Origin: Ascoidea asiatica JCM 7603
Lineage: Eukaryota; Fungi; Ascomycota
Length of the DNA stretch: 64,000 bases
NCBI GenBank assembly: GCA_001600695.1
Contig: BCKQ01000002.1
Span: 537,006 to 601,005 of the forward strand
Reading direction: 5' to 3'
In this document: positions 24,913 through 38,184 of the stretch, one piece after another
How positions within the stretch are numbered: the first letter of the stretch is position 1
How the letters are laid out: the number at the start of each line of letters is the position of its first letter
Position numbers and translations under genes: made by a program
The notes under the pieces: model-generated
What the model was told of the DNA's origin: nothing
What the model saw: the letters and a program-made list of their open reading frames with translations, nothing else
The model's database searches: none

Positions 24913-25752
24913 CTAAATTAAATGTTCAATAGTATTTGAAGTTGGTAATTGTTGATTATTAATTAATAAATCCCACCATTTGAATAAATAACTTTCACAA
25001 ATTAATTTAAACCATGGAGTAAAAGGTATATTTTTATCATTAAGCATAATTTTTAAATCATCAATTGAAATATATTTGAAATTTTTAACTTCATTTAAAT
25101 TTGGATTAATTTTTGGATTTGATTGATTTGATTTTATAAATAATATATAATCAATTTCATGTTCAGACCAATTAATATCATTATTATTTGGAGCCATATA
25201 ATGAATTCTAGTTAAAAATTTAAAATTTTCAATTGGAACATCAGATGAATTTATACCAAGTTCATGAAATAATTTTCTTTGAGCAGCAAATTTAACACCT
25301 TTAATAGAATTTGATAAATTTGAACCAAATTCATTTGATATTAATAAAGGATGAGAACAACAAGTATTTGTCCACATATTTGGAAAAGTTATTTTTTCAT
25401 CAGCTCTTTGTTGTAATAATAATTTATTTTCATTATTAAATAAAAATACAGAAAATGCTCTATGTAATAAACCTTTTTTAATATTTGAAGTTAAATGACA
25501 AGTTTTTTTAGTTGCACCACCAATTGGATGATCGAAATAATCAAGTACAATACAATTTTCATTCATTAATTTAATTTGTTCTTCATCATGACCAATAAAT
25601 AAATTTGGATCATGTTTTGAAAGATTTGAATCTTCAGAAGAAGAACTTGAAGAAGGTAATTCAGATTTTAATGGAATAATTTCATCTTGAAAAATTTGTA
25701 AAATATCATCTTTTGAAAGAGATTTAACTAAATCAGAATAATTCATTGTCAT
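24913..25752 (-). CDS. IDI1: Isopentenyl-diphosphate delta-isomerase (type 1)
   Basis: GHDEEQIKLM.E.C, LLHRAFSVFLF, WTNTCCSHPL, WSEHEIDYIL, FTPWF. Confidence 0.97.
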   Translation of the reverse strand: MTMNYSDLVKSLSKDDILQIFQDEIIPLKSELPSSSSSSEDSNLSKHDPNLFIGHDEEQIKLMNENCIVLDYFDHPIGGATKKTCHLTSNIKKGLLHRAFSVFLFNNENKLLLQQRADEKITFPNMWTNTCCSHPLLISNEFGSNLSNSIKGVKFAAQRKLFHELGINSSDVPIENFKFLTRIHYMAPNNNDINWSEHEIDYILFIKSNQSNPKINPNLNEVKNFKYISIDDLKIMLNDKNIPFTPWFKLICESYLFKWWDLLINNQQLPTSNTIEHLI

Positions 25753-26200
25753 TTTTTTTACAAATTATTGAATTATTTATTATTATTATTTTTATTATTA
25801 TATTGAATTATGATTGATTTTTTTTTTTTGAAGAAAAAAGTGAATGAAATTAAATCTTCAGTATATTCATAAAGAGAATGTGATGAAATATTGAAATGAG
25901 AGAGAATCTAATAAATTGAAGATAATTTGAAGATAAAGAAACTAAAGATTAATTTGATATAAATATAAGAATATGATATGAATGAATGTTTATATAAAAT
26001 TTTCAGTTAATTCGATAAATTAGAAAAAAAACCGAAATAAGTAAAAACAAGTGAAAATCTAAGATGGTTTTTATTCCAATAACGACATCCCATAGTCAAT
26101 ATATCGTACATAATTGGCAGTTTAGTACTACAGACCGTACAGCTCTAAATAATCGAGGACCTCAGGTAGAATCAACTCATAATTTAATATGACTGTCAGG

Positions 26201-26219
26201 CACACACACACACACACAC
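26201..26219. repeat. (CA)n microsatellite
   Basis: cacacacacacacacacac. Confidence 0.9.
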
Positions 26220-26224
26220 TTAGG

Positions 26225-26232
26225 CTCGTATA
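26225..26232 (+). promoter_or_regulatory. Sterol regulatory element (CTCGTATA, Upc2/Ecm22) upstream of IDI1
   Basis: Exact TCGTATA consensus about 475 nt upstream of a mevalonate-pathway gene; related TCGTACA at 26104. Confidence 0.55.
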
Positions 26233-27927
26233 ACCCGTCGAGGAAGAAGAAGCAGAAACTGAAGCAGTGCAGCAGCACGGTACTAAATACACCGCAGTTT
26301 ACACGCGGTACGAGCATTGACCCACCAGCTTTCTATGTAATATAGAGTCATGTGACACTGAAGTCTCGTGACCTGACAAATTGCCTCTTTCGCTTGATGT
26401 GTGTCTTTGTCTGCCTTGGGTTGGTCTTGTGCTGATTGTGCTGCTTGAGGTGTTTGTGGTGCCAGAGATGTTTGTAGTGTGCTTGTGGTGATTTTGTGCT
26501 GCTGCGGTGAAGAGAAAGCGGAGAAGGACCTGTTTCTATTGCATGCTTCACTTGCTGTCGGTATTAATTATTCATGCTTCCAGGGTTGACAAAGCAACAG
26601 GAATTTCAAATACAGCATGCAAAAATACACTGTTCTTTGTCTAGACTCTCAGTTCCACTCAGCTGCAATCTCACTTTTGAAAATAGTGCTAGTTCCACTG
26701 AAAGTCTTCATGGATGAGGGTGAATGAACAGTGGAGATGATGATCATAATACGTAATACAGAAGAAGGAATTAGATTCAGATGAATTTATAACAATATTG
26801 ATATCTATTTACAAGATTAAAGAAATAAAGAAATAAAAAGATAGAGAGAGTAAGAATTGTGTTTTAACATAAGAGTACTCTTACAAACTCATTATCTCAG
26901 GTTTCTTATTATATTTTATTTTATTACTATTATCACCATTATCATTATCATTATTAATATTATTATCGCAATCACAATCAAAATCAAAATTCTTTTTCTT
27001 TCCTTAGATAAAAAACCCAATTATTATCATAATTAACAAAATTAAAACTAATATTAAACAAGTATTGTCAGAATTTATTTGATTAACGTCTCATAGTTTG
27101 CATTAATTTTGCATTTTCTTCTTGAAATCTTTGTCCAACTCTTTCACTATGTTTTAAGAATTTTTCTGTACATTTTAAAACGCATCCTTCTTCTCTATTT
27201 GTTAAATTTTTTGATGTAAAATCACTAACACAATCACTAAAACATTTTTCAACCAAATTTGAATAAAGCTAAGATAAATTGAAAAAAAAAATTTTGAATT
27301 CGAATTTGAAATTAAAAGTTAGTGATTTAGTTCTTAAATCCTAGAAATAAGAAAAAAAGTATAAAAATATATCAAATTCACTTACACGCATAAAATCTTT
27401 CATTTGTTTTTGTTCAACAAGAGCTTGAAATGACTGTTGTTCACGAGAATTTAATTGATCCATTTTGTTTTATTTTACAAATCTTTAATTTAATTTAATT
27501 TAATAATAATTTATTCTTCAATTATTTGATTAATCTATTAGTTATATCTTATTTTCAATTTCTATTAACTTTATTCAAATATATTATATTAAACACTATT
27601 AGATTATTAAATTATTATCACTTTCATTTCTAACAAATTTTCAATTTTCAATGTCGGTAAATCTACAGTACCGGTAGAAACTTTACACTATTAAAAGCAA
27701 TATTATACTGAATGTCGGATGAATTTTCAATTCAATAAACTTATTATCTCAAACAAATTTACGGTAAAATAATAATCATAAATTAAAATATCATAATTAA
27801 AAAAAAAAAAAAAAACTTTATTAAACATTGAATTAGCAAACTTTATAAAAATACATTTATATTTCAAATTCCATAGATAAAAAAATAAAAATTAATAACT
27901 AAAAATCAATTTTTAAGAATTGATAAA

Positions 27928-28746
27928 ATGGTTTATTTTGAATCTTATTCTAAAAGAGCTGAAAAACATAATTCACCTTTAATCAAAAAACTTTTCAAAA
28001 TTATTGAAGATAAAAAAACAAATTTATGTGCTTCAATTGATGTTCAATCAACTAATGAATTTTTATCTTTAATTGAAAAATTAGGTCCTTTTATTTGTTG
28101 TGTTAAAACTCATATTGATATAATTAATGATTTTACTTATGAAAATACAATTATACCTTTAATTAAATTAAAATTAAAATATAATTTTTTAATATTTGAA
28201 GATAGAAAATTTGCTGATATTGGTAATACTGTTAAATATCAATATATTGGTGGAATTTATAAAATTTCTTCATGGGCTGATATAACTAATGCTCATGGTG
28301 TAACAGGCGAAGGAATTATCAAAGGTCTTAAACAAGGTGCTATTGAAACAACTTCTGAACCTCGTGGATTGTTAATGCTTGCAGAATTATCTTCAAAGGG
28401 TTCAATTGCAAAAGGTGATTATACAAAACAAACTATAGAAATGGCAAAATCTGATAATCAATTTGTTATCGGTTTTATTGCTCAAAATTATATAAATGTT
28501 GATAAAAATCAATTTGATTGGGTGATAATGACTCCTGGTGTTGGTTTAGATGATAAAGGTGATAAATTAGGTCAACAATATAGAACTGTTGAAGATGTTG
28601 TTTTGGGAGGTTCTGATATAATCATAGTTGGAAGAGGATTATTTGGTAAAAATAGAGATCCAGTCATAGAAGGTGAAAGATATAGAAAAGCAGGTTGGGA
28701 TGCTTATCAAAGAAGAATTCTCAATCTTGATATGTCTAATAAATGA
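27928..28746 (+). CDS. URA3: Orotidine-5'-phosphate decarboxylase
   Basis: [54 protein letters not shown]. Confidence 0.98.
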
Positions 28747-29292
28747 TGTCTATTAAAATCAATAATTAATATCATATTCAATTCTTTCTTCCTTTAAATA
28801 TATTCTATTCTTCTTACGTTGTATCTCATTATCTTCATAATCCCATCAAAACCATTTTTTCGGTAATCCTTTTTTTAAGTTTTTTTTTTTTTTTTTCGAC
28901 CTACAATTAAATTCACGTGCTTGATATGTTCAATTCCTTTATACCCACAGATCTGGCTTTTTTGTTCAATCCAAGTTTGGAATTGTTGGTGCATCAAAAT
29001 TATCTCAAAAATGTTGGAATTTCAAAGATTTGTTAGGCCTTTCCCATCGTAAAACCACCACATTTTCAAAACGTTATCTTTAAATCTTATTTAACCAAAT
29101 AATTTTCCACTTTTTCAAATTTAACTCTTTTATTGTGATTTTTTTAATCAAACCTTTCGAATTTTTTTTTTTTTTCGATTAATAATTATCAAAGAGAAAT
29201 TTTTAAACTATCTTTTTATTTTTAATCTTTTTTAATTAATAATTAATTAAGTTAAAATTCTGAAATAAACCATATAATTAAATAATCTCAAA

Positions 29293-32200
29293 ATGCGTCC
29301 AGAAGTCGAGCAAGAACTTGCACATACTCTTTTAATTGAGCTTTTAGCTTATCAATTTGCTTCACCTGTTAAATGGATTCAAACCCAAAAAGTTTTATTT
29401 GAAGATAAAAAAATTTCAAAATTTATTGAAATTGGTCCTTCTCCAACTTTAGTTGGTATGGCTAAAAGAACTTTAAAGAATTATGAACCTTTTGATCAAG
29501 CTTTAAATATTAATAGAGAATTATTAAGTTACGCTAATGATCAAGGTGCAATTTATTATACTGAAGCTCCTTCTCCAAAGACTTCAGGTTCTAGTTCTAG
29601 TTCAAAAGCTGCCGCATCTGAAGTATCTGCTCCAATTCCTGCACCTGTTGTTCAAGCTGCTCCAGTTGCTGTTGCACCTGCCCCAGTTAGTGCTCCAGCT
29701 GCTGCCGTTACCGACCAACCAATTAAAGCATCTGTTGTTCTTCATGTTCTTGTAGCTCATAAATTAAAAAAATCTTTATCTGATGTTCCAATGGGTAAAA
29801 CTATTAAAGAACTTGTTAATGGTAAATCAACTGTTCAAAATGAGATTTTAGGTGATTTAGGTAAAGAATTTGGCTCAACTCCAGAAAAACCTGAAGAAAC
29901 TCCATTACAAGAATTAGCTGATGGCTTTCAAGAATCTTATTCTGGTACTCTTGGTAAAGTTTCTCAAACTTTAATTTCAAAATTGATTGCATCCAAAATG
30001 CCAGGTGGTTTTAACTTATCTACTGCAAAATCTTATTTACAAAAAAAATTCGGTGCTCCAGCTTCAATTCAAGATGGAATTTTATTAATGTCAACATTAA
30101 GTGAACCTGAAAAACGTCTTTCTTCTGAAGCTGATGCTCATTCTTTTTTTGATAAAGCAGCTCAAGATTATTCTTCTGCTTCTGGTATTTCGTTAAGTTC
30201 CGGTGCAGCAGCAGCAGCTGGCCCTGCTATGATGATGCCTGCTATGGCAGCAGCTTCAGGTCCAATTTCTATTCCTGATGAAAAAACTAAAGCAAGTTTA
30301 ATATTAAAAGTTATCATTGCATCTAAATTAAAAAAATCAATTGATGAAATTCCAATGACCAAAACCATTAAAGATTTAGTCAATGGTAAATCAACTGTTC
30401 AAAATGAGATTTTAGGTGATTTAGGTAAAGAATTTGGTTCAACTCCAGAAAAACCTGAAGAAACTCCATTACAAGAATTAGCTGATGGATTTCAAGAATC
30501 ATTTGATGGTTCTTTAGGAAAAGTTTCTCAAACTTTAGTTTCAAAATTCATTTCTTCAAAAATGCCTGGTGGATTTACTGCTTCTTCAGCAAAATCTTAT
30601 TTTGAATCTAAATGGGGTCTTGGTGAAGGTAGACAAAACGCTGCTTTATTAGTAGCATGCAGCATGCAACCTGAAAAAAGATTTTCTGCTGAAGCTGATG
30701 CTCATACTTTCTTAGATTCTGTTGCTCAAAAATATGCATCTGTTTCCGGTGTAAACCTTTCTCAAGGCGCTTCTGCTGGAGGTGCTGTGGGCGGCCAAAT
30801 GGCAGGTTTCGATCCTGCTGCTTTAGATGAAATTACCAAGGATCAAAAAATTATGGCTAGACAACACTTAGAAGTTCTTGCTAGATATCTTAAGATTGAT
30901 TTAAGAAAAGGGGATAGAAAGGTTCTTGAAGAACAAGAACTTAATAAATCTTTACAAGCTGAAATTGATTTATTCAATCAAGAATTAGGTGATACATTTG
31001 CTGCAGGAATTGTTCCTATTTTCAGCTCTAAAAAATGTAGAGTTTATGATTCTTTTTGGAATTGGGCAAGACAAGATGTTCTTTCAATGTATTATGATAT
31101 TATTTTTGGTAAATTATCAAATGTTGACCGTGAAATTGTTTCAAGATGTATTTCTGTTATGAATAAAGCATCTGATGAATTAATTACCTTTATGCAATAT
31201 CATATTAGAAAAGCTGGCAAAATTTCAGAAAGTGAAAATAATTTGGAACTCAAATATTCTTTAGCCTATAAACTAGGTACACAATTAATTGAAAATTGTA
31301 AAGAAGTCATTGGAACTGAGCCTGTTTTCAAGGATGTTGATTACCCAACTGGTCCAAAAACTACTATTACTGAGAAAGGGGATATTCAATACGAAGAAGT
31401 TAGAAGAGATAACACAAGATCGTTATCTCAATATGTTTCTAATATTGCTCTTGGAGGTGAATTAACAAAGATTAAAGAACCTACTATCAGAGATGATTTA
31501 GTTAAAGTATACCAAGCTTTAGTTAAACAAGCATCATTAACGAAGGACACAAAGCTCGAGGTCACCAAATTATATTCTGAGTTAGTTCAATTTATTGATC
31601 AACATGAAGAAATTGAAACCAAAAGATCAGCTGCATCCATTTTAGCAACTGCTACTAGTGAAGATGAGCTCTCCGATGATGATACTTCCGAAATCGCTTC
31701 ATTGAAAGAAAAATCTACTATAAAAGAACCAGTTTCCAGTTCTATTCCTGTTGAAACAATTCCATTTTTACATATTCAAAAGAAAACTCCTACCGGAGAT
31801 TGGTTATATGATCGTGGCTTAACTTCTGTATATTTGAATACATTAGAAAACGCTGCTATAAATGGTATCACTTTCAAAGAGAAATTTGTTCTTGTTACAG
31901 GTGCAGGAAAAGGCTCTATTGGTGCCGATATTGTTAAAGGTCTCATATCCGGTGGTGCTAAAGTTATTGTCACTACTTCCAGATTTAACAGCTCAAGCAC
32001 TGATTTTTACAAAAATTTATACATCAAACATGGTTCAAAAGAATCTAAGTTAATTGTTGTTCCATTCAATCAAGCTTCTAAACAAGATGTTAAAGAATTA
32101 GTCGAGTTCATTTATTCCGAGCTTAAATGGGATCTTGATGCTATAATTCCTTTCGCAGCTATCCCTGAAAATGGTGTTCAAACCACCACTATTGATTCTA

Positions 32201-35200
32201 AATCTGAGCTTGCTCATAGAATTATGTTAACAAATGTTTACAAAATAATGGGTGAAGTTAAATTCCAGAAAGAAAAGAGAGGCTTTAAAACCAGACCTGC
32301 TGAAGTTATTTTACCTTTATCGCCTAATCATGGTATGTTTGGATCTGATGGTCTTTATTCTGAATCGAAAATCTCTCTTGAAATGTTATTGAACAAATGG
32401 GGAAGTGAAGACTGGAGTTCTTACTTAACAATAGTTGGTGCAATTATTGGTTGGACTAGAGGAACAGGTCTTATGTCAGCTAACAATATGGTTGCAGAAG
32501 GTATCGAAAAATATGGTGTTAGAACATTTTCTCAACAAGAAATGGCTTTTAACTTATTAGGTTTATTATCCGATGAAATTTGTAACTTAGCTCAAGAAGG
32601 TCCTGTAAGAGCCGATCTTAATGGTGGTTTCCAGTTTTTGACCAATTTAAGAGAATTAACTGCTAATTTGAGATCTGATTATCAAAGAACAAGTGAAATT
32701 CGTAAAGCTGTCAGTATGGAGTCATCTATTGAGCATAAGGTTGTTTATGGTGCCAATGATGCCCAATCTAATACCAACAAAGTTGAATTACAGCCTCGTG
32801 CTAATATGCAGTTCGAATTTCCTAATCTTAAATCTTATAAAGATATTAAGAAAATGTCTCCTCATCTTGGTGATCTTCTTGATTTAGAGAGTGTAATAGT
32901 TGTTACTGGTTTCGCTGAAGTTAGTCCTTTCGGTTGCTCTTCAACTCGTTGGGATATGGAAGCTAATAGTGGATTCTCTATAGAGTCAAGTATTTATATG
33001 GCATACATCATGGGTCTTATTAAATATCAAAATACAGCCAAGCATGCTGGTTGGGTTGATGCCAAATCAGGTACTCCAGTTGAAGATAAAGATATTAAAT
33101 CCAAATATGAAAAGTACATTTTAGAACACACTGGTATTCGTTTAATAGAGCCTGAATTGTTCAATGGTTATGATCCTAAAAACAAACATCTCCTACAAGA
33201 GGTAGTTGTTGAGCATGATATGGAACCATTTTTAACTTCAGAAGAAACAGCAAATGCATATAAAAAAGAACATCAAGATAATTGTGAAATTTTCGAAAGT
33301 GATTCTGGTGAATATTCAGTTATCATCAAAAAGGGTGCAATCCTCTATATTCCTAAATCTATACACTTCAATCGTTTAGTTGCTGGTCAAGTACCAACTG
33401 GTTGGGATGCTCGTCGTTATGGTGTTCCAGATGATATTGTTGATCAAGTGGATCAAGTTACATTATTTAATCTTGTTGCTACAGTTGAAGCTTTAATTTC
33501 TTCCGGTGTTTGCGATCCTTATGAATTTTATAAATATATTCACGTCAGTGAATTTGGTATATGTTCTGGTTCAGGTATGGGTGGTGTTAACGCCTTGAGG
33601 GGTATGTTCAGAGACAGATATAAAGATATGTCTGTTCAAAACGATATTCTCCAAGAATCATTTATCAACACAATGTCAGCTTGGGTTAATATGCTATTAA
33701 TTTCTTCATCGGGACCCATAATTACTCCAGTTGGTGCATGTGCTACTGCTGTTGAATCTGTCGAAATTGGTTGTCAAGTTATCTTAAATAAGAAAGCAAA
33801 AGTTTGTATTGTTGGTGGGTATGATGATTTCCAAGAAGAAGGTTCATTTGAGTTCGCAAATATGAATGCAACCAGTAATGCCGATGAAGAGTTAGCTAGT
33901 GGTCGTTCTCCAGCAGAAATGTCTAGACCAGCAACCACATCTAGAAATGGTTTTATGGAATCCCAAGGTTCAGGTATCCAAATTATTATGACTGCCAAAT
34001 TAGCTCTTGAAATGGGTGTGCCAATTTATGCTATTGTTGGTATGACAAGCACTGCAAGTGACAAAATCGGAAGATCAGTTCCAGCTCCAGGAAAAGGTAT
34101 TTTAACAACTGCTAAAGAATTTCATGGTAGTTATAAATATCCTACTCCTATTTTAGATGTTAAATACCGTAAACGTCAATTAGATAAAAGAATCAGAAAT
34201 ATTAATAATATGCTTGAAGAAGAGTTATTGGAAGTTGAAGATCATGCTGATTCTATGGAAATGGAAAAAAAGGATTTCAATAGAAATGAATTTATCAAAG
34301 AAAGAGTTGAAGAAGTTAAACTTCAAGCTAGAAAAGAAATTCAAAATGCTAAGAAATATTACAGTATTGATATATTCAAGAATGAAAGAGTCGCACCTCT
34401 TCGTGCCTCTTTAGCAATGTTTGGTTTAACAATTGATGATTTAGGTGTTGCTTCATTTCATGGAACATCAACTAAAGCCAATGATAAAAATGAATCTGAA
34501 ACTATCGATAAAATGTTAAAACATCTTGGTCGTGCTAAGGGTAATCCAGTTATTGGTGTTTTCCAAAAATACTTAACAGGTCATCCAAAAGGTGCCGCTG
34601 GTGCTTGGATGCTTAATGGTGCTATTCAAATTTTGAATTCTGGTATTGTTCCTGGTAATCGTAATGCAGATAATGTCGATATTGAATTAATGAAATATGA
34701 TCATATTCTTTATCCATCTAAAACAATTAAGACTGATGGAATTAAAGCAGCTTCTGTTACTTCTTTTGGTTTTGGTCAAAAAGGTGCACAAGCTGTTGTT
34801 ATTCATCCTGATTATATTTATTCAGTTATTGACGAAGCTACTTATAATGACTATATCGTTAAAAGAGCTGCGCGTCAAAAACGTACTTATAGATTTTTCC
34901 ATACTGCTTTAACTAGAAGTTCAATGTTTGTTGCTAAAGCACATGCTCCATATGAAGATAGTTTGGAACAACCAGTCTACTTAGATCCAAGTATAAGAGT
35001 TGAAAGTAAAGGTGAAGAATTCATATATAATGGTAAATCTATTCAAAAATCAGATTTATTACGTCAAGTAGATGAAACTGGAAAGACTTTATCAGCAATG
35101 ACCAAAGGTCAAAAAAATGTTGGTGTTGATGTTGAATTGATATCTGAGATTAATATTGAAAATGAAACTTTCATTGAAAGAAATTTCACTAAAAATGAAA

Positions 35201-35478
35201 TTGAATATTGCACAAAAGCACCATCACCCCAATCATCATTTGCAGGAGCATGGTCCGCTAAAGAAGCCGTTTTCAAAGCTTTAGGAACTAAATCTTTAGG
35301 AGGTGGGGCCTCATTGAAAGACATTGAAATTGTTCATGATAAAGTTTCAGGTGCACCTATTGTTAATTTAACTGGTAATGCCGCTGAAGTTGCTGTTGAT
35401 TCTAACATAAAGAACTTCAAAGTTAGCATTAGTCATAATGATATTCAATCTGTTGCTGTTGCATTTGCCGAATTTTAA
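29293..35478 (+). CDS. FAS2: Fatty acid synthase alpha subunit with two tandem ACP domains (MPT fragment-ACP-ACP-KR-KS-PPT)
   Basis: MRPEVEQELAH..ELLAYQFASPV start, two GKSTVQNE motifs, KR VTGAGKGSIG, KS PVGACATA and PPT VGVDVE..WSAKEA..SISH. Confidence 0.97.
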   Translation: MRPEVEQELAHTLLIELLAYQFASPVKWIQTQKVLFEDKKISKFIEIGPSPTLVGMAKRTLKNYEPFDQALNINRELLSYANDQGAIYYTEAPSPKTSGSSSSSKAAASEVSAPIPAPVVQAAPVAVAPAPVSAPAAAVTDQPIKASVVLHVLVAHKLKKSLSDVPMGKTIKELVNGKSTVQNEILGDLGKEFGSTPEKPEETPLQELADGFQESYSGTLGKVSQTLISKLIASKMPGGFNLSTAKSYLQKKFGAPASIQDGILLMSTLSEPEKRLSSEADAHSFFDKAAQDYSSASGISLSSGAAAAAGPAMMMPAMAAASGPISIPDEKTKASLILKVIIASKLKKSIDEIPMTKTIKDLVNGKSTVQNEILGDLGKEFGSTPEKPEETPLQELADGFQESFDGSLGKVSQTLVSKFISSKMPGGFTASSAKSYFESKWGLGEGRQNAALLVACSMQPEKRFSAEADAHTFLDSVAQKYASVSGVNLSQGASAGGAVGGQMAGFDPAALDEITKDQKIMARQHLEVLARYLKIDLRKGDRKVLEEQELNKSLQAEIDLFNQELGDTFAAGIVPIFSSKKCRVYDSFWNWARQDVLSMYYDIIFGKLSNVDREIVSRCISVMNKASDELITFMQYHIRKAGKISESENNLELKYSLAYKLGTQLIENCKEVIGTEPVFKDVDYPTGPKTTITEKGDIQYEEVRRDNTRSLSQYVSNIALGGELTKIKEPTIRDDLVKVYQALVKQASLTKDTKLEVTKLYSELVQFIDQHEEIETKRSAASILATATSEDELSDDDTSEIASLKEKSTIKEPVSSSIPVETIPFLHIQKKTPTGDWLYDRGLTSVYLNTLENAAINGITFKEKFVLVTGAGKGSIGADIVKGLISGGAKVIVTTSRFNSSSTDFYKNLYIKHGSKESKLIVVPFNQASKQDVKELVEFIYSELKWDLDAIIPFAAIPENGVQTTTIDSKSELAHRIMLTNVYKIMGEVKFQKEKRGFKTRPAEVILPLSPNHGMFGSDGLYSESKISLEMLLNKWGSEDWSSYLTIVGAIIGWTRGTGLMSANNMVAEGIEKYGVRTFSQQEMAFNLLGLLSDEICNLAQEGPVRADLNGGFQFLTNLRELTANLRSDYQRTSEIRKAVSMESSIEHKVVYGANDAQSNTNKVELQPRANMQFEFPNLKSYKDIKKMSPHLGDLLDLESVIVVTGFAEVSPFGCSSTRWDMEANSGFSIESSIYMAYIMGLIKYQNTAKHAGWVDAKSGTPVEDKDIKSKYEKYILEHTGIRLIEPELFNGYDPKNKHLLQEVVVEHDMEPFLTSEETANAYKKEHQDNCEIFESDSGEYSVIIKKGAILYIPKSIHFNRLVAGQVPTGWDARRYGVPDDIVDQVDQVTLFNLVATVEALISSGVCDPYEFYKYIHVSEFGICSGSGMGGVNALRGMFRDRYKDMSVQNDILQESFINTMSAWVNMLLISSSGPIITPVGACATAVESVEIGCQVILNKKAKVCIVGGYDDFQEEGSFEFANMNATSNADEELASGRSPAEMSRPATTSRNGFMESQGSGIQIIMTAKLALEMGVPIYAIVGMTSTASDKIGRSVPAPGKGILTTAKEFHGSYKYPTPILDVKYRKRQLDKRIRNINNMLEEELLEVEDHADSMEMEKKDFNRNEFIKERVEEVKLQARKEIQNAKKYYSIDIFKNERVAPLRASLAMFGLTIDDLGVASFHGTSTKANDKNESETIDKMLKHLGRAKGNPVIGVFQKYLTGHPKGAAGAWMLNGAIQILNSGIVPGNRNADNVDIELMKYDHILYPSKTIKTDGIKAASVTSFGFGQKGAQAVVIHPDYIYSVIDEATYNDYIVKRAARQKRTYRFFHTALTRSSMFVAKAHAPYEDSLEQPVYLDPSIRVESKGEEFIYNGKSIQKSDLLRQVDETGKTLSAMTKGQKNVGVDVELISEINIENETFIERNFTKNEIEYCTKAPSPQSSFAGAWSAKEAVFKALGTKSLGGGASLKDIEIVHDKVSGAPIVNLTGNAAEVAVDSNIKNFKVSISHNDIQSVAVAFAEF
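29818..30500 (+). repeat. Intragenic direct repeat: 119-nt ACP cores at 29818-29936 and 30382-30500
   Basis: Offset 564 nt (188 codons); by eye only 2 synonymous mismatches (29874/30438 and 29925/30489). Confidence 0.92.
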
Positions 35479-35570
35479 ACTATTTGAATTTTATTTATTT
35501 TTTTTATTGAGTTAGATTTTATCTCAATTTTTCAAATTTATACATTTATACATTATATATAATCAATATT

Positions 35571-36155
35571 TCAAGAAAAAAATTTTGAGTAATTTTTTTT
35601 TTGATTCTCTTTTTGTTTCGAGATATTTTCTTCACAATTTTTCAAATCTTTTGAAATAAGCTGATCAGTTTTATCCAAATCAAAGGCTTGTTGTAAATTA
35701 ATTATACTTTCTTCATATCTTTTTAAATTCAATAAGTTTTTACCAAGTCTATAGTAAATTTTAGTTAAATCTTTTAAATTAAAAGTTTCACTAAAATCTT
35801 TATATTCACCTTTTAATTCAAGTAAATAATTGCAATATTTTATTGATTCAATGGAATTTCCTAATTTCATATTTATTAAAGAAATATTCAATAGAAGTTG
35901 TTTTTTTATCATTAAAAATTGAGTTATAAGAGTAGAAATATCGGCTGTAGCAGGCATTAATTCATTACAATATAATAAAGATTTCTTGAATTTTTTTAAA
36001 GAAATTTCTAATTCATTTTCTTTGAAGTATGAAACACCAATATTTTTAAGTATTGAAATTACTTTTAGTGATTCAACAAAATCATCTTTATTGAAATTGT
36101 TATCATTATCTGGAATCTCGGCATAAATATCCTGGAGGGTTTGACTTTCATTCAT
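35571..36155 (-). CDS. CPR7: TPR-only cyclophilin-40-like Hsp90 co-chaperone (Cpr7 without PPIase domain)
   Basis: DIYAEIPDND..F.KDDF..SL..LK.IG..FK..KFKKSL.YCNELMP resembles the Cpr7 linker and TPR1; KIYYRLG; ends KKNYSKFFS. Confidence 0.78.
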   Translation of the reverse strand: MNESQTLQDIYAEIPDNDNNFNKDDFVESLKVISILKNIGVSYFKENELEISLKKFKKSLLYCNELMPATADISTLITQFLMIKKQLLLNISLINMKLGNSIESIKYCNYLLELKGEYKDFSETFNLKDLTKIYYRLGKNLLNLKRYEESIINLQQAFDLDKTDQLISKDLKNCEENISKQKENQKKNYSKFFS

Positions 36156-36337
36156 TTTTTTTTTTGAAATATTTTTATTTTCAGATCAATAACTTTTTAT
36201 TTCCATTTATTAACTTCTTATCCGAATAAATTGAAAAAAATTTGATTAAATAATTGTATTTTATTCTTTGAAAAATCATTAAATTTGATAAAGTTTAGTA
36301 TAGAATCCATAATTGTGGGTGTAAAATGTAAGCAAGG

Positions 36338-36345
36338 CCGGGTAA
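36338..36345 (+). promoter_or_regulatory. Reb1-type site (CCGGGTAA) in CPR7/SRP54 divergent promoter
   Basis: Exact Reb1 consensus in the middle of a 424-nt divergent intergenic region. Confidence 0.55.
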
Positions 36346-36579
36346 TATTCTCAGCAGGCTGCCGTTAAAATATATCATTGTGGGTGATAATAGATTGATT
36401 GATTTGAACTTGGTGGTCAGGAATAAAGTAAACTAGTGGTAATAAGGAAAAAGAAGAGAATAAAAACTAAAAACTGTATTCTGGATTAATATACTCTTCT
36501 GAAATATATTTATTATCATTTTAGCATTTTTGGTTTTGAGTATTACAATAGTTAAGTGATAAGTAAAAAGGTTGTGAAA

Positions 36580-38184
36580 ATGGTGTTAGCTGATTTAGGA
36601 AGAAGAATAAATGCTGCAGTTTCACAGGTTACTTCTTCAAGTAAAAGTGTTGAAGAAGCCGATCTTGATTTAATGTTAAAGGAGATATCTAATGCATTAT
36701 TGGAAAGTGATGTTAGCATTAAATTAGTTCTTAATTTACGTAATTCTATAAAAAAGAAAATCATAAATGATAAAACTCCTGGTTTAAATAGAAAAAAATT
36801 AGTTCAAAAAACTGTTTTTGATGAGTTATGTGCATTAGTTGATTGTGAAGCACAACCTTATAAACCTAAGAAACATCAATCTAATGTGATTATGTTTGTT
36901 GGTTTACAAGGTGCTGGTAAAACAACAACATGTACTAAATTAGCTGTATATTATCAAAGAAGAGGTTTTAAAGTTGGTATGGTTTGTGCAGATACATTTA
37001 GAGCAGGTGCGTTTGATCAATTGAAACAAAATGCAACAAAGGCAAGAATTCCATTTTATGGTTCATATACTGAAACCGATCCAGTTTTAGTTGCAAGAAA
37101 AGGTGTAGAAAGTTTTAAAAAAGAAAAATTTGAGATTATAATTGTAGATACATCTGGTAGACATCGTCAAGAAAAAGAGTTATTCAAAGAAATGGTGCAG
37201 ATTGGTAATGCAGTTAAACCAAATCAGACAGTTATGGTTCTTGATGGATCGATAGGTCAAGCAGCTCAACAACAGGCTTTAGCATTCAAAGAAGCTTCAA
37301 ATTTCGGTGCAATTATATTAACAAAAATGGATGGTGAAGCTAAAGGTGGTGGAGCTATATCAGCAGTAGCAGCTACTAAAATGCCAATAATATTTATTGG
37401 TGTCGGTGAACACACACAAGATTTTGAAACATTTTCTCCAAGACAATTTATATCAAAATTATTGGGAATTGGAGATATTCAAGGATTAATGGAACATGTT
37501 AAATCACTAAATTTAGATCAAAAAGATACAATAAAAAATTTTCAAGAAGGAAAATTCACGTTAAATGATTTTCAAACTCAAATGAATAATATTTTAAAAA
37601 TGGGACCATTAGCACAGATAGCTAATATGATTCCAGGTATGGGAGATATGATGAATCAAGTTGGAGAAGAAGAAGCATCAAAAAGATTAAAAAGAATGGT
37701 TTATATAATGGATTCTATGACTAAAAAAGAACTAGATTCAGATGGTAAAATTTTTATAGAAGAACCTTCAAGAATAATACGTGTTGCAAGAGGATCAGGT
37801 ACAACTGTTACTGAAGTTGAAATGGTTTTATTTCAACAAAGAATGATGTCTACAATGGCAGCAACAAATATGAATATGATGGGTGGACAAAAAGGTAGAG
37901 GAGGTATGCCAGGTATGCCTGGCATGAGAGGAGGTGCAACACCATCACCTCAAAATATCCAAAGAGCAATGCAACAATTACAAAATAATCCAGGAGTAAT
38001 GAATAATATGATGAAAATGTTTGGCGGGGGAGCTCCAGGTGGTGGAATGCCTAATATGTCAGAAATGATGAAATCTATGGGATCAATGGGAGGACGTGGA
38101 ATGCCAAATCCTAGTGAAATGATGGGTATGATGCAAAACCCACAAATGCAACAAATGATGAAGCAATTTGGTATGGGCATGTAA
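36580..38184 (+). CDS. SRP54: Signal recognition particle 54 kDa GTPase
   Basis: The true start is MVLADLG at ATG 36580. [20 protein letters not shown] and a Met/Gly-rich M-domain tail. Confidence 0.97.

What the first reader, a model, noticed from the sequence alone, without database searches (positions are those of the whole stretch)
29713..30764. FAS2 with tandem duplicated acyl-carrier (ACP) domains in a budding yeast
Seen: two complete ACP units 188 codons apart, each with an intact phosphopantetheine motif GKSTVQNE (Ser codons 29827 and 30391) and SKMPGGF, joined by an Ala/Met-rich linker (GAAAAAGPAMMMPAMAAASGP). Known: S. cerevisiae and Candida Fas2 have one ACP; double-ACP FAS is described in the oleaginous basidiomycete Rhodotorula toruloides and has been used for FAS engineering. 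Inference: an independent duplication in Saccharomycotina that doubles the carriers per reaction chamber, on a gene otherwise of yeast Fas2 architecture.
Basis: partly seen in the sequence, partly recalled or inferred. Interest (0 to 1): 0.8.

Follow-up and report, generated by a model that had tools for sequence, protein, structure and literature searches.

The report
Yeast fatty-acid synthase with two carriers
The only fatty acid synthase of this budding yeast (an Ascoidea species) has two substrate-carrier domains instead of one; this was described before in red basidiomycete yeasts, and it turns out to have arisen separately at least twice among budding yeasts.

Summary
Confirmed. The 2061-aa Fas2 (29293-35478) has two complete ACP di-domains, 188 codons apart and 67% identical. 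Both keep the phosphopantetheine Ser and the GX2GX3G motif; the KR, KS and PPT active sites are intact. Short-read contigs from three runs tile both copies. The genome is an Ascoidea, probably A. asiatica.

The duplication is not unique to this species. Saccharomycopsis crataegensis and an unnamed close relative of it carry it, and A. rubescens almost certainly does: its RefSeq model splices a false intron over an assembly gap between two identical ACP cores. Pichia kudriavzevii has a separate, younger duplication (copies 90% identical). About 125 other ascomycete Fas2 clusters have one ACP.

Shared ancestry with the Rhodotorula pair is rejected (AU p about 1e-9). One duplication in the Ascoideales ancestor is favoured by site patterns (about 70%) but not proven. 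The core around the Ser is homogenised within species, which points to gene conversion; a first-reader note on this same stretch says so too.

Likely function: two redundant carriers working in parallel, as shown for Rhodotorula. I found no paper on budding-yeast cases. It is a new, independently evolved member of a known kind.

The parts
29293..35478 (+). FAS2, fatty acid synthase alpha subunit, 2061 aa: MPT C-part, ACP1, ACP2, helical domain, KR, KS, PPT; single copy in the genome
   Evidence: 81% identical to A. rubescens Fas2
29710..30195 (+). ACP1 (aa 140-301): canonical lobe plus structural lobe
   Evidence: PF18325 222 bits; AlphaFold block pLDDT about 78-94
29827..29829 (+). Ser179, predicted phosphopantetheine site of ACP1 (equivalent to S. 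cerevisiae Ser180)
29815..29907 (+). Homogenised core, copy 1 (Ser motif and GX2GX3G helix); 91/93 nt identical to copy 2
   Evidence: collapsed contig 29818-29924
30196..30273 (+). 26-aa Ala/Met/Pro/Gly linker between the ACPs, predicted disordered
   Evidence: pLDDT below 50 only here
30274..30759 (+). ACP2 (aa 328-489): canonical lobe plus structural lobe
   Evidence: PF18325 230 bits
30391..30393 (+). Ser367, predicted phosphopantetheine site of ACP2
30379..30471 (+). Homogenised core, copy 2
32356..32358 (+). KR catalytic Tyr1022 (S. cerevisiae Tyr839 motif)
33739..33741 (+). KS catalytic Cys1483; His1723 and His1764 are also present
35122..35136 (+). PPT domain GVDVE motif (self-phosphopantetheinylation)

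Best explanation
This is the housekeeping alpha6-beta6 fatty acid synthase of an Ascoidea yeast. Its alpha chain carries two active ACPs in series on flexible linkers, so each reaction chamber would hold six carriers instead of three. Both are probably loaded by the enzyme's own PPT domain and work in parallel and largely redundantly, each able to run the whole elongation cycle, with at most a modest effect on flux or on the C16:C18 ratio. The tandem most likely arose once in the ancestor of Ascoideales (Ascoidea plus Saccharomycopsis), independently of Rhodotorula and of a younger P. kudriavzevii duplication. In Ascoidea, patchy gene conversion keeps the Ser-bearing core nearly identical. Shown: the architecture, intact motifs, fold of both copies, distribution, and within-species core identity. 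Inferred: loading of both Ser, redundancy, single ancestral origin, and conversion as the cause of the identity.
For: Both ACPs have the Ser motif and GX2GX3G, and net charge equals that of the S. cerevisiae ACP. Both fold as separate di-domains (mean pLDDT 84.8); an ACP of the model superposes on 2UV8 at 0.9 A over 162 residues. One FAS2 and one FAS1 match in the genome. A tree of Fas2 without the ACP puts window + A. rubescens + Saccharomycopsis in one clade (SH-aLRT 100), all double, and needs 3 state changes for Rhodotorula, Ascoideales and P. kudriavzevii. Site patterns: 6 derived residues are shared by ACP1 of both genera but not ACP2, two of them at columns 99% invariant in single-ACP yeasts; 0 are shared by all four Saccharomycopsis ACPs alone; 10 are shared by the two Ascoidea copies. 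Core synonymous differences are 2/31 codons between paralogues, against 10/29 between orthologues (p 0.009) and 41% gene-wide (p 5e-5). Each Ascoidea species has its own residues in both cores (V/E in the window, I/D in A. rubescens). Redundancy is shown for R. toruloides (PMC13705844).
Against: There are no expression, proteomic or biochemical data for this protein. AU tests cannot separate one ancestral duplication from one per genus (p 0.17, 0.09 and 0.22). A. rubescens has the reverse state at two of the six ACP1-diagnostic sites. Core against flank within the window alone is borderline (p 0.054), and codon bias in this 29% GC genome lowers synonymous divergence. The A. rubescens evidence rests on a gapped assembly. 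Only two Saccharomycopsis-clade sequences were available.
Confidence: 0.65

Rival explanations
1. Same function, but Ascoidea and Saccharomycopsis duplicated the ACP separately, which makes three origins in Saccharomycotina.
For: The two Ascoidea ACPs group together (99/94). A clade of all four Saccharomycopsis ACPs is not rejected (p-AU 0.17). P. kudriavzevii shows that the event recurs.
Against: No derived residue is shared by all four Saccharomycopsis ACPs alone, although the genus has a long stem branch (0.46) elsewhere in Fas2. Six ACP1-specific residues are shared across genera. In the best trees Saccharomycopsis ACP1 groups with Ascoidea (97/89 and 96/79).
Confidence: 0.2
2. The two ACPs are specialised: for example one prefers priming or KS docking and the other the reductive steps or termination, or one acts mainly as a steric spacer.
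For: The copies differ at 36 of 83 positions in the structural lobe, against 18 of 79 in the canonical lobe. Position-specific residues persist across genera. Saccharomycopsis-clade ACP2 has changed the SKMPGGF motif, and one copy has lost the third Gly of GX2GX3G. Single-ACP mutants of R. toruloides make less C16:0 (PMC13705844).
Against: The catalytic core is identical in both window copies. An acyl chain stays on one ACP through a cycle unless it is passed on through KS. Either R. toruloides ACP alone supports normal growth.
Confidence: 0.2
3. The duplication is selectively neutral: the chamber tolerates a second ACP, and it persists only because clean deletion is rare.
For: Redundancy in R. 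toruloides. The window ACPs depart from invariant columns more often than the rest of the protein (15% against 8.8%, p 0.027).
Against: Near-identical 100-nt cores in direct repeat offer a simple in-frame route to lose one copy, yet two copies persist in both genera. All key motifs are kept. Saccharomycopsis-clade ACPs show no excess relaxation.
Confidence: 0.25
4. Assembly artefact.
For: No long reads; the short-read runs may be the source of the assembly.
Against: The copies are 74% identical with a unique linker, a unique contig spans the junction, and the same tandem occurs in related genomes.
Confidence: 0.01

Closest known systems
Rhodotorula (Rhodosporidium) toruloides FAS with two ACPs (PMC3493640; PMC13705844)
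   Same: Two tandem ACP di-domains about 190 aa apart, both with the Ser; fungal type I barrel; 75-76% identity between copies there, 67% here.
   Different: Basidiomycete. Its alpha chain also carries DH and MPT (2928 aa, different split), whereas this is the yeast-type split inside MPT. Separate origin. Host is oleaginous; I found no such report for Ascoidea.
S. cerevisiae and C. albicans Fas2 (PDB 2UV8, 6U5V)
   Same: Domain order, all catalytic residues, about 61-62% identity, ACP fold.
   Different: One ACP; 1885-1887 aa against 2061 aa.
Pichia kudriavzevii Fas2 (AWT08578.1, XP_029322311.1) and Saccharomycopsis crataegensis Fas2 (XP_064852397.1), found here
   Same: Yeast-type Fas2 with two intact ACPs, offset 189 aa.
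   Different: The P. kudriavzevii copies are 90% identical, pair with each other inside Pichiaceae (100/97), and its relatives have one ACP: a younger, separate event (p-AU 0.034 against joining Ascoideales). The Saccharomycopsis copies are 61% identical and show no recent core conversion.
Tandem ACPs of PUFA synthases and the mupirocin PKS (as discussed in PMC3493640 and PMC13705844)
   Same: Several carriers in series on one chain; reported to raise yield.
   Different: Open PKS scaffolds and small four-helix ACPs, not a closed barrel with di-domain ACPs; not tested here.

Membership tests
Saccharomycotina-type Fas2 (alpha subunit) | Order MPT C-part, ACP, helical domain, KR, KS, PPT on one chain | tested here: met
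Saccharomycotina-type Fas2 (alpha subunit) | KR Tyr, KS Cys-His-His and PPT motif intact | tested here: met
Saccharomycotina-type Fas2 (alpha subunit) | Separate FAS1 beta-subunit gene | tested here: met
   one PF08354 match in a 2087-aa open frame on contig C2; its other domains were not inspected
Saccharomycotina-type Fas2 (alpha subunit) | Single ACP (the usual state) | tested here: not met
   two ACPs; this is the departure reported here
Tandem-ACP fungal FAS I (R. toruloides kind) | Two full-length ACP di-domains in tandem, each with the Ser | tested here: met
Tandem-ACP fungal FAS I (R. toruloides kind) | Both ACPs expressed and phosphopantetheinylated | not testable with these tools
   no RNA run or proteome accessible
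Tandem-ACP fungal FAS I (R. toruloides kind) | Either ACP alone is sufficient | not testable with these tools
   shown only for R. toruloides (PMC13705844)
Rhodotorula lineage of double-ACP FAS (common descent) | ACP1 and ACP2 orthologous by position to the Rhodotorula ACPs | tested here: not met
   p-AU 1e-9; intervening lineages have one ACP
Rhodotorula lineage of double-ACP FAS (common descent) | Alpha chain that includes DH and the whole MPT | tested here: not met

The most novel reading that the evidence does not exclude
ACP tandem duplication is a recurrent, selected solution in fungal-type FAS I. In Ascoideales the two carriers have split their roles (position-specific residues kept across two genera; a remodelled structural lobe in Saccharomycopsis ACP2), while gene conversion holds the Ser-bearing docking face constant in Ascoidea. 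That would give natural series of young (P. kudriavzevii), old converted (Ascoidea) and old diverged (Saccharomycopsis) pairs for testing how carrier number and crowding set flux and chain length in the FAS chamber.
Probability: 0.2. Interest if true: 0.65.

Novelty: new member of a known kind. Interest (0 to 1): 0.45.

Why it matters
The papers I could read present the double ACP as a peculiarity of oleaginous red yeasts, possibly linked to lipid overproduction. Finding it in Ascoideales and in P. kudriavzevii shows repeated origins on the S. cerevisiae-type scaffold and weakens a simple link to oil accumulation. It supplies natural yeast-type Fas2 chains with a spare carrier slot, of the kind used in R. 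toruloides to place a thioesterase inside the chamber; P. kudriavzevii is itself an industrial host (own knowledge). It also shows that the trait is under-counted, because the near-identical core breaks short-read assemblies and gene models (A. rubescens).

Tried and rejected
- Assembly artefact: rejected.
- Inheritance from a duplication shared with Rhodotorula: positional orthology rejected. The looser test that only pulls all Ascoideales ACPs next to the basidiomycete group was not rejected (p 0.06), so the argument also rests on the single-ACP lineages in between.
- One origin with P. kudriavzevii: rejected weakly by AU (p 0.034), and clearly by the Fas2 tree and the 90% identity of its copies.
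- ACP-specific relaxed selection across Ascoideales: not supported once the rest of Fas2 is used as control; only the window and P. kudriavzevii show an excess.
- Search for junction fragments in broken assemblies: 6 hits, none covering more than 60% of the junction query; the three I read were single-ACP fragments.
- JGI metagenome scan: nothing confirmed.
- Single-sequence fold: uninformative, pLDDT 49.
- Ten paper searches found no mention of double ACP in Ascoidea, Saccharomycopsis or P. kudriavzevii. Fischer 2015 (PMC4456111) and Zhu 2017 (PMID 28218911) were not held, so a remark there cannot be excluded.

Full report
Observation. The window holds one uninterrupted ORF at 29293-35478 (+) of 2061 aa. 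Pfam reads it as Fas2 with two Fas_alpha_ACP stretches followed by the helical, KR, KS and PPT domains. A search of the whole genome finds only these two ACP matches (230 and 222 bits) and one FAS1 match, so this is the housekeeping enzyme. The copies are 66-67% identical in protein and 74% in DNA. Contigs from three public runs reproduce unique flanks, a unique 517-nt piece across the junction and one collapsed 107-nt repeat, without differences. They may be the source of the assembly, and no RNA or long-read run was offered, but an artefact cannot produce two diverged copies with a unique linker.

Organism. The best relative is Ascoidea rubescens Fas2 (81%), with the same gene order URA3, FAS2, TPR protein, SRP54. 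The genome has 71 contigs, which matches the 71 records listed for A. asiatica NRRL Y-17576 in PMC6041473. The species name is therefore an inference. FAS2 has no CTG codon, so the unusual code of this clade does not affect the translation.

Both carriers look functional. Each keeps the Ser motif, the GX2GX3G motif needed for chain sequestration (PMC8683515) and the net charge of the S. cerevisiae ACP; KR Tyr1022, KS Cys1483/His1723/His1764 and the PPT motif are present. With a 24-sequence alignment AlphaFold gives two well-formed domains (mean pLDDT 84.8) joined by a disordered linker, and an ACP of the model superposes on yeast FAS 2UV8 at 0.9 A over 162 residues.

Distribution. Among the 120 best full-length relatives, three have two ACPs: Saccharomycopsis crataegensis, an unnamed Logan sequence that groups with it, and Pichia kudriavzevii, where several independent records agree, including a 2.5-Mb contig. 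The A. rubescens protein appears single, but its gene spans 6030 nt for a 1873-aa model. The DNA shows two identical ACP cores on either side of a 307-N gap, and the model splices over them, dropping two residues of the glycine motif. The duplicated stretch has nearly the same bounds as the repeat that breaks the contigs of the window's species, and the part after the gap resembles window ACP2 (43/57 against 29/57 for ACP1). A. rubescens is therefore very probably double too. About 125 other full-length ascomycete Fas2 clusters seen in two searches have one ACP. This census covers cluster representatives in top-120 lists and under-counts tandems that break assemblies. Outside ascomycetes, tandems occur in Rhodotorula, Rhodosporidiobolus, Sporobolomyces and Phenoliferia, in oomycetes, in the chytrid Entophlyctis and in Diplonema.

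Origin. A tree of Fas2 without the ACP places Ascoidea and Saccharomycopsis together (100) beside Phaffomycetales and Saccharomycetales, with P. kudriavzevii inside single-ACP Pichiaceae; three changes of state are needed. In ACP trees the P. kudriavzevii pair is sister to itself (100/97), the basidiomycete ACPs form their own group, and all Ascoideales ACPs lie within Saccharomycotina. Positional orthology with Rhodotorula is rejected (p-AU 1e-9) and union with P. kudriavzevii weakly so (0.034). Whether Ascoidea and Saccharomycopsis share one event is not settled by AU tests (p 0.09-0.22). Site patterns favour one event: six derived residues mark ACP1 in both genera, none marks all four Saccharomycopsis ACPs alone, and ten are shared by the two Ascoidea copies, as expected from later conversion. 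I put this at about 70%.

Gene conversion. In the 31 codons around the Ser the window copies differ at 2 synonymous codons, against 10 of 29 between the window and A. rubescens (p 0.009) and 41% across the rest of the gene (p 5e-5). Each species carries its own residues in both cores. The contrast with the flanks inside the window is borderline (p 0.054), and the perfect identity in A. rubescens may partly reflect repeat collapse. Saccharomycopsis shows no such tract. A first-reader note on this stretch (s1-627556) says the same; I had reached this reading before the look-up and tested it here.

Mechanism. In fungal FAS each chamber holds three tethered ACPs that visit the catalytic sites (PMC10786820, PMC7260205). 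A tandem gives six. The only tested precedent I could read is R. toruloides: both ACPs are expressed (PMC3493640), either alone supports normal growth and lipid yield, and single inactivation lowers C16:0 (PMC13705844). The most likely reading here is the same: two parallel, largely redundant carriers with a small effect on flux or chain length. Specialisation is possible, since the structural lobes have diverged more than the canonical lobes (47/83 against 61/79 identical). Neutral persistence is possible too, though a direct repeat with near-identical cores should be easy to lose. None of this is shown for this protein.

Novelty. Tandem-ACP fungal FAS is known. I found no paper that reports it in budding yeasts, but two key papers were not readable and the sequences are already in public databases. 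What is new is the yeast-type scaffold, at least two independent origins within Saccharomycotina, concerted evolution of the core, and a hidden case in RefSeq.

Noticed in passing
L001:8001-14030 (A. rubescens, XP_020047571.1): The RefSeq Fas2 model splices a 408-nt 'intron' over a 307-N gap between two identical ACP cores, which hides the second ACP and removes two residues of the GX2GX3G motif.
   Followed up: yes
P0124-P0130 (Pichia kudriavzevii records): Fas2 models vary: several of 2422-2425 aa have about 360 extra N-terminal residues, probably the upstream FTR1 gene fused in; others start late (2008 aa); AWT08578.1 (2063 aa) looks complete. All carry two ACPs.
   Followed up: partly
L002 and L006, ACP2: Saccharomycopsis-clade ACP2 has A-K-F-P-G-G-Y in place of the conserved S-K-M-P-G-G-F, and the L006 copy has Ser at the third Gly of GX2GX3G; a better candidate for specialisation than the window's pair.
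   Followed up: partly
window 30820-35475 and orthologues: Outside the ACPs, Ascoideales Fas2 departs from 9-15% of columns that are nearly invariant in single-ACP fungi (mean 0.9%; P. kudriavzevii 0.3%). Partly a sampling effect; whether it is genome-wide or specific to FAS was not tested.
   Followed up: partly
window 35571-36155 (-): 194-aa protein with only TPR matches, also present at the same place in A. rubescens (190 aa).
   Followed up: no
window 24913-38184: The order IDI1-like, URA3, FAS2, TPR protein, SRP54 is kept in A. rubescens but not around FAS2 in Saccharomycopsis.
   Followed up: partly
P0136-P0166: Tandem ACPs occur in fungal-type FAS of oomycetes (grouping by position across Phytophthora and Pythium), Entophlyctis, Diplonema and unnamed metagenome proteins; conversion could mask their true age.
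   Followed up: partly
window 29293-35478: No CTG codon in 2061 codons, in line with CUG avoidance in this clade.
   Followed up: no
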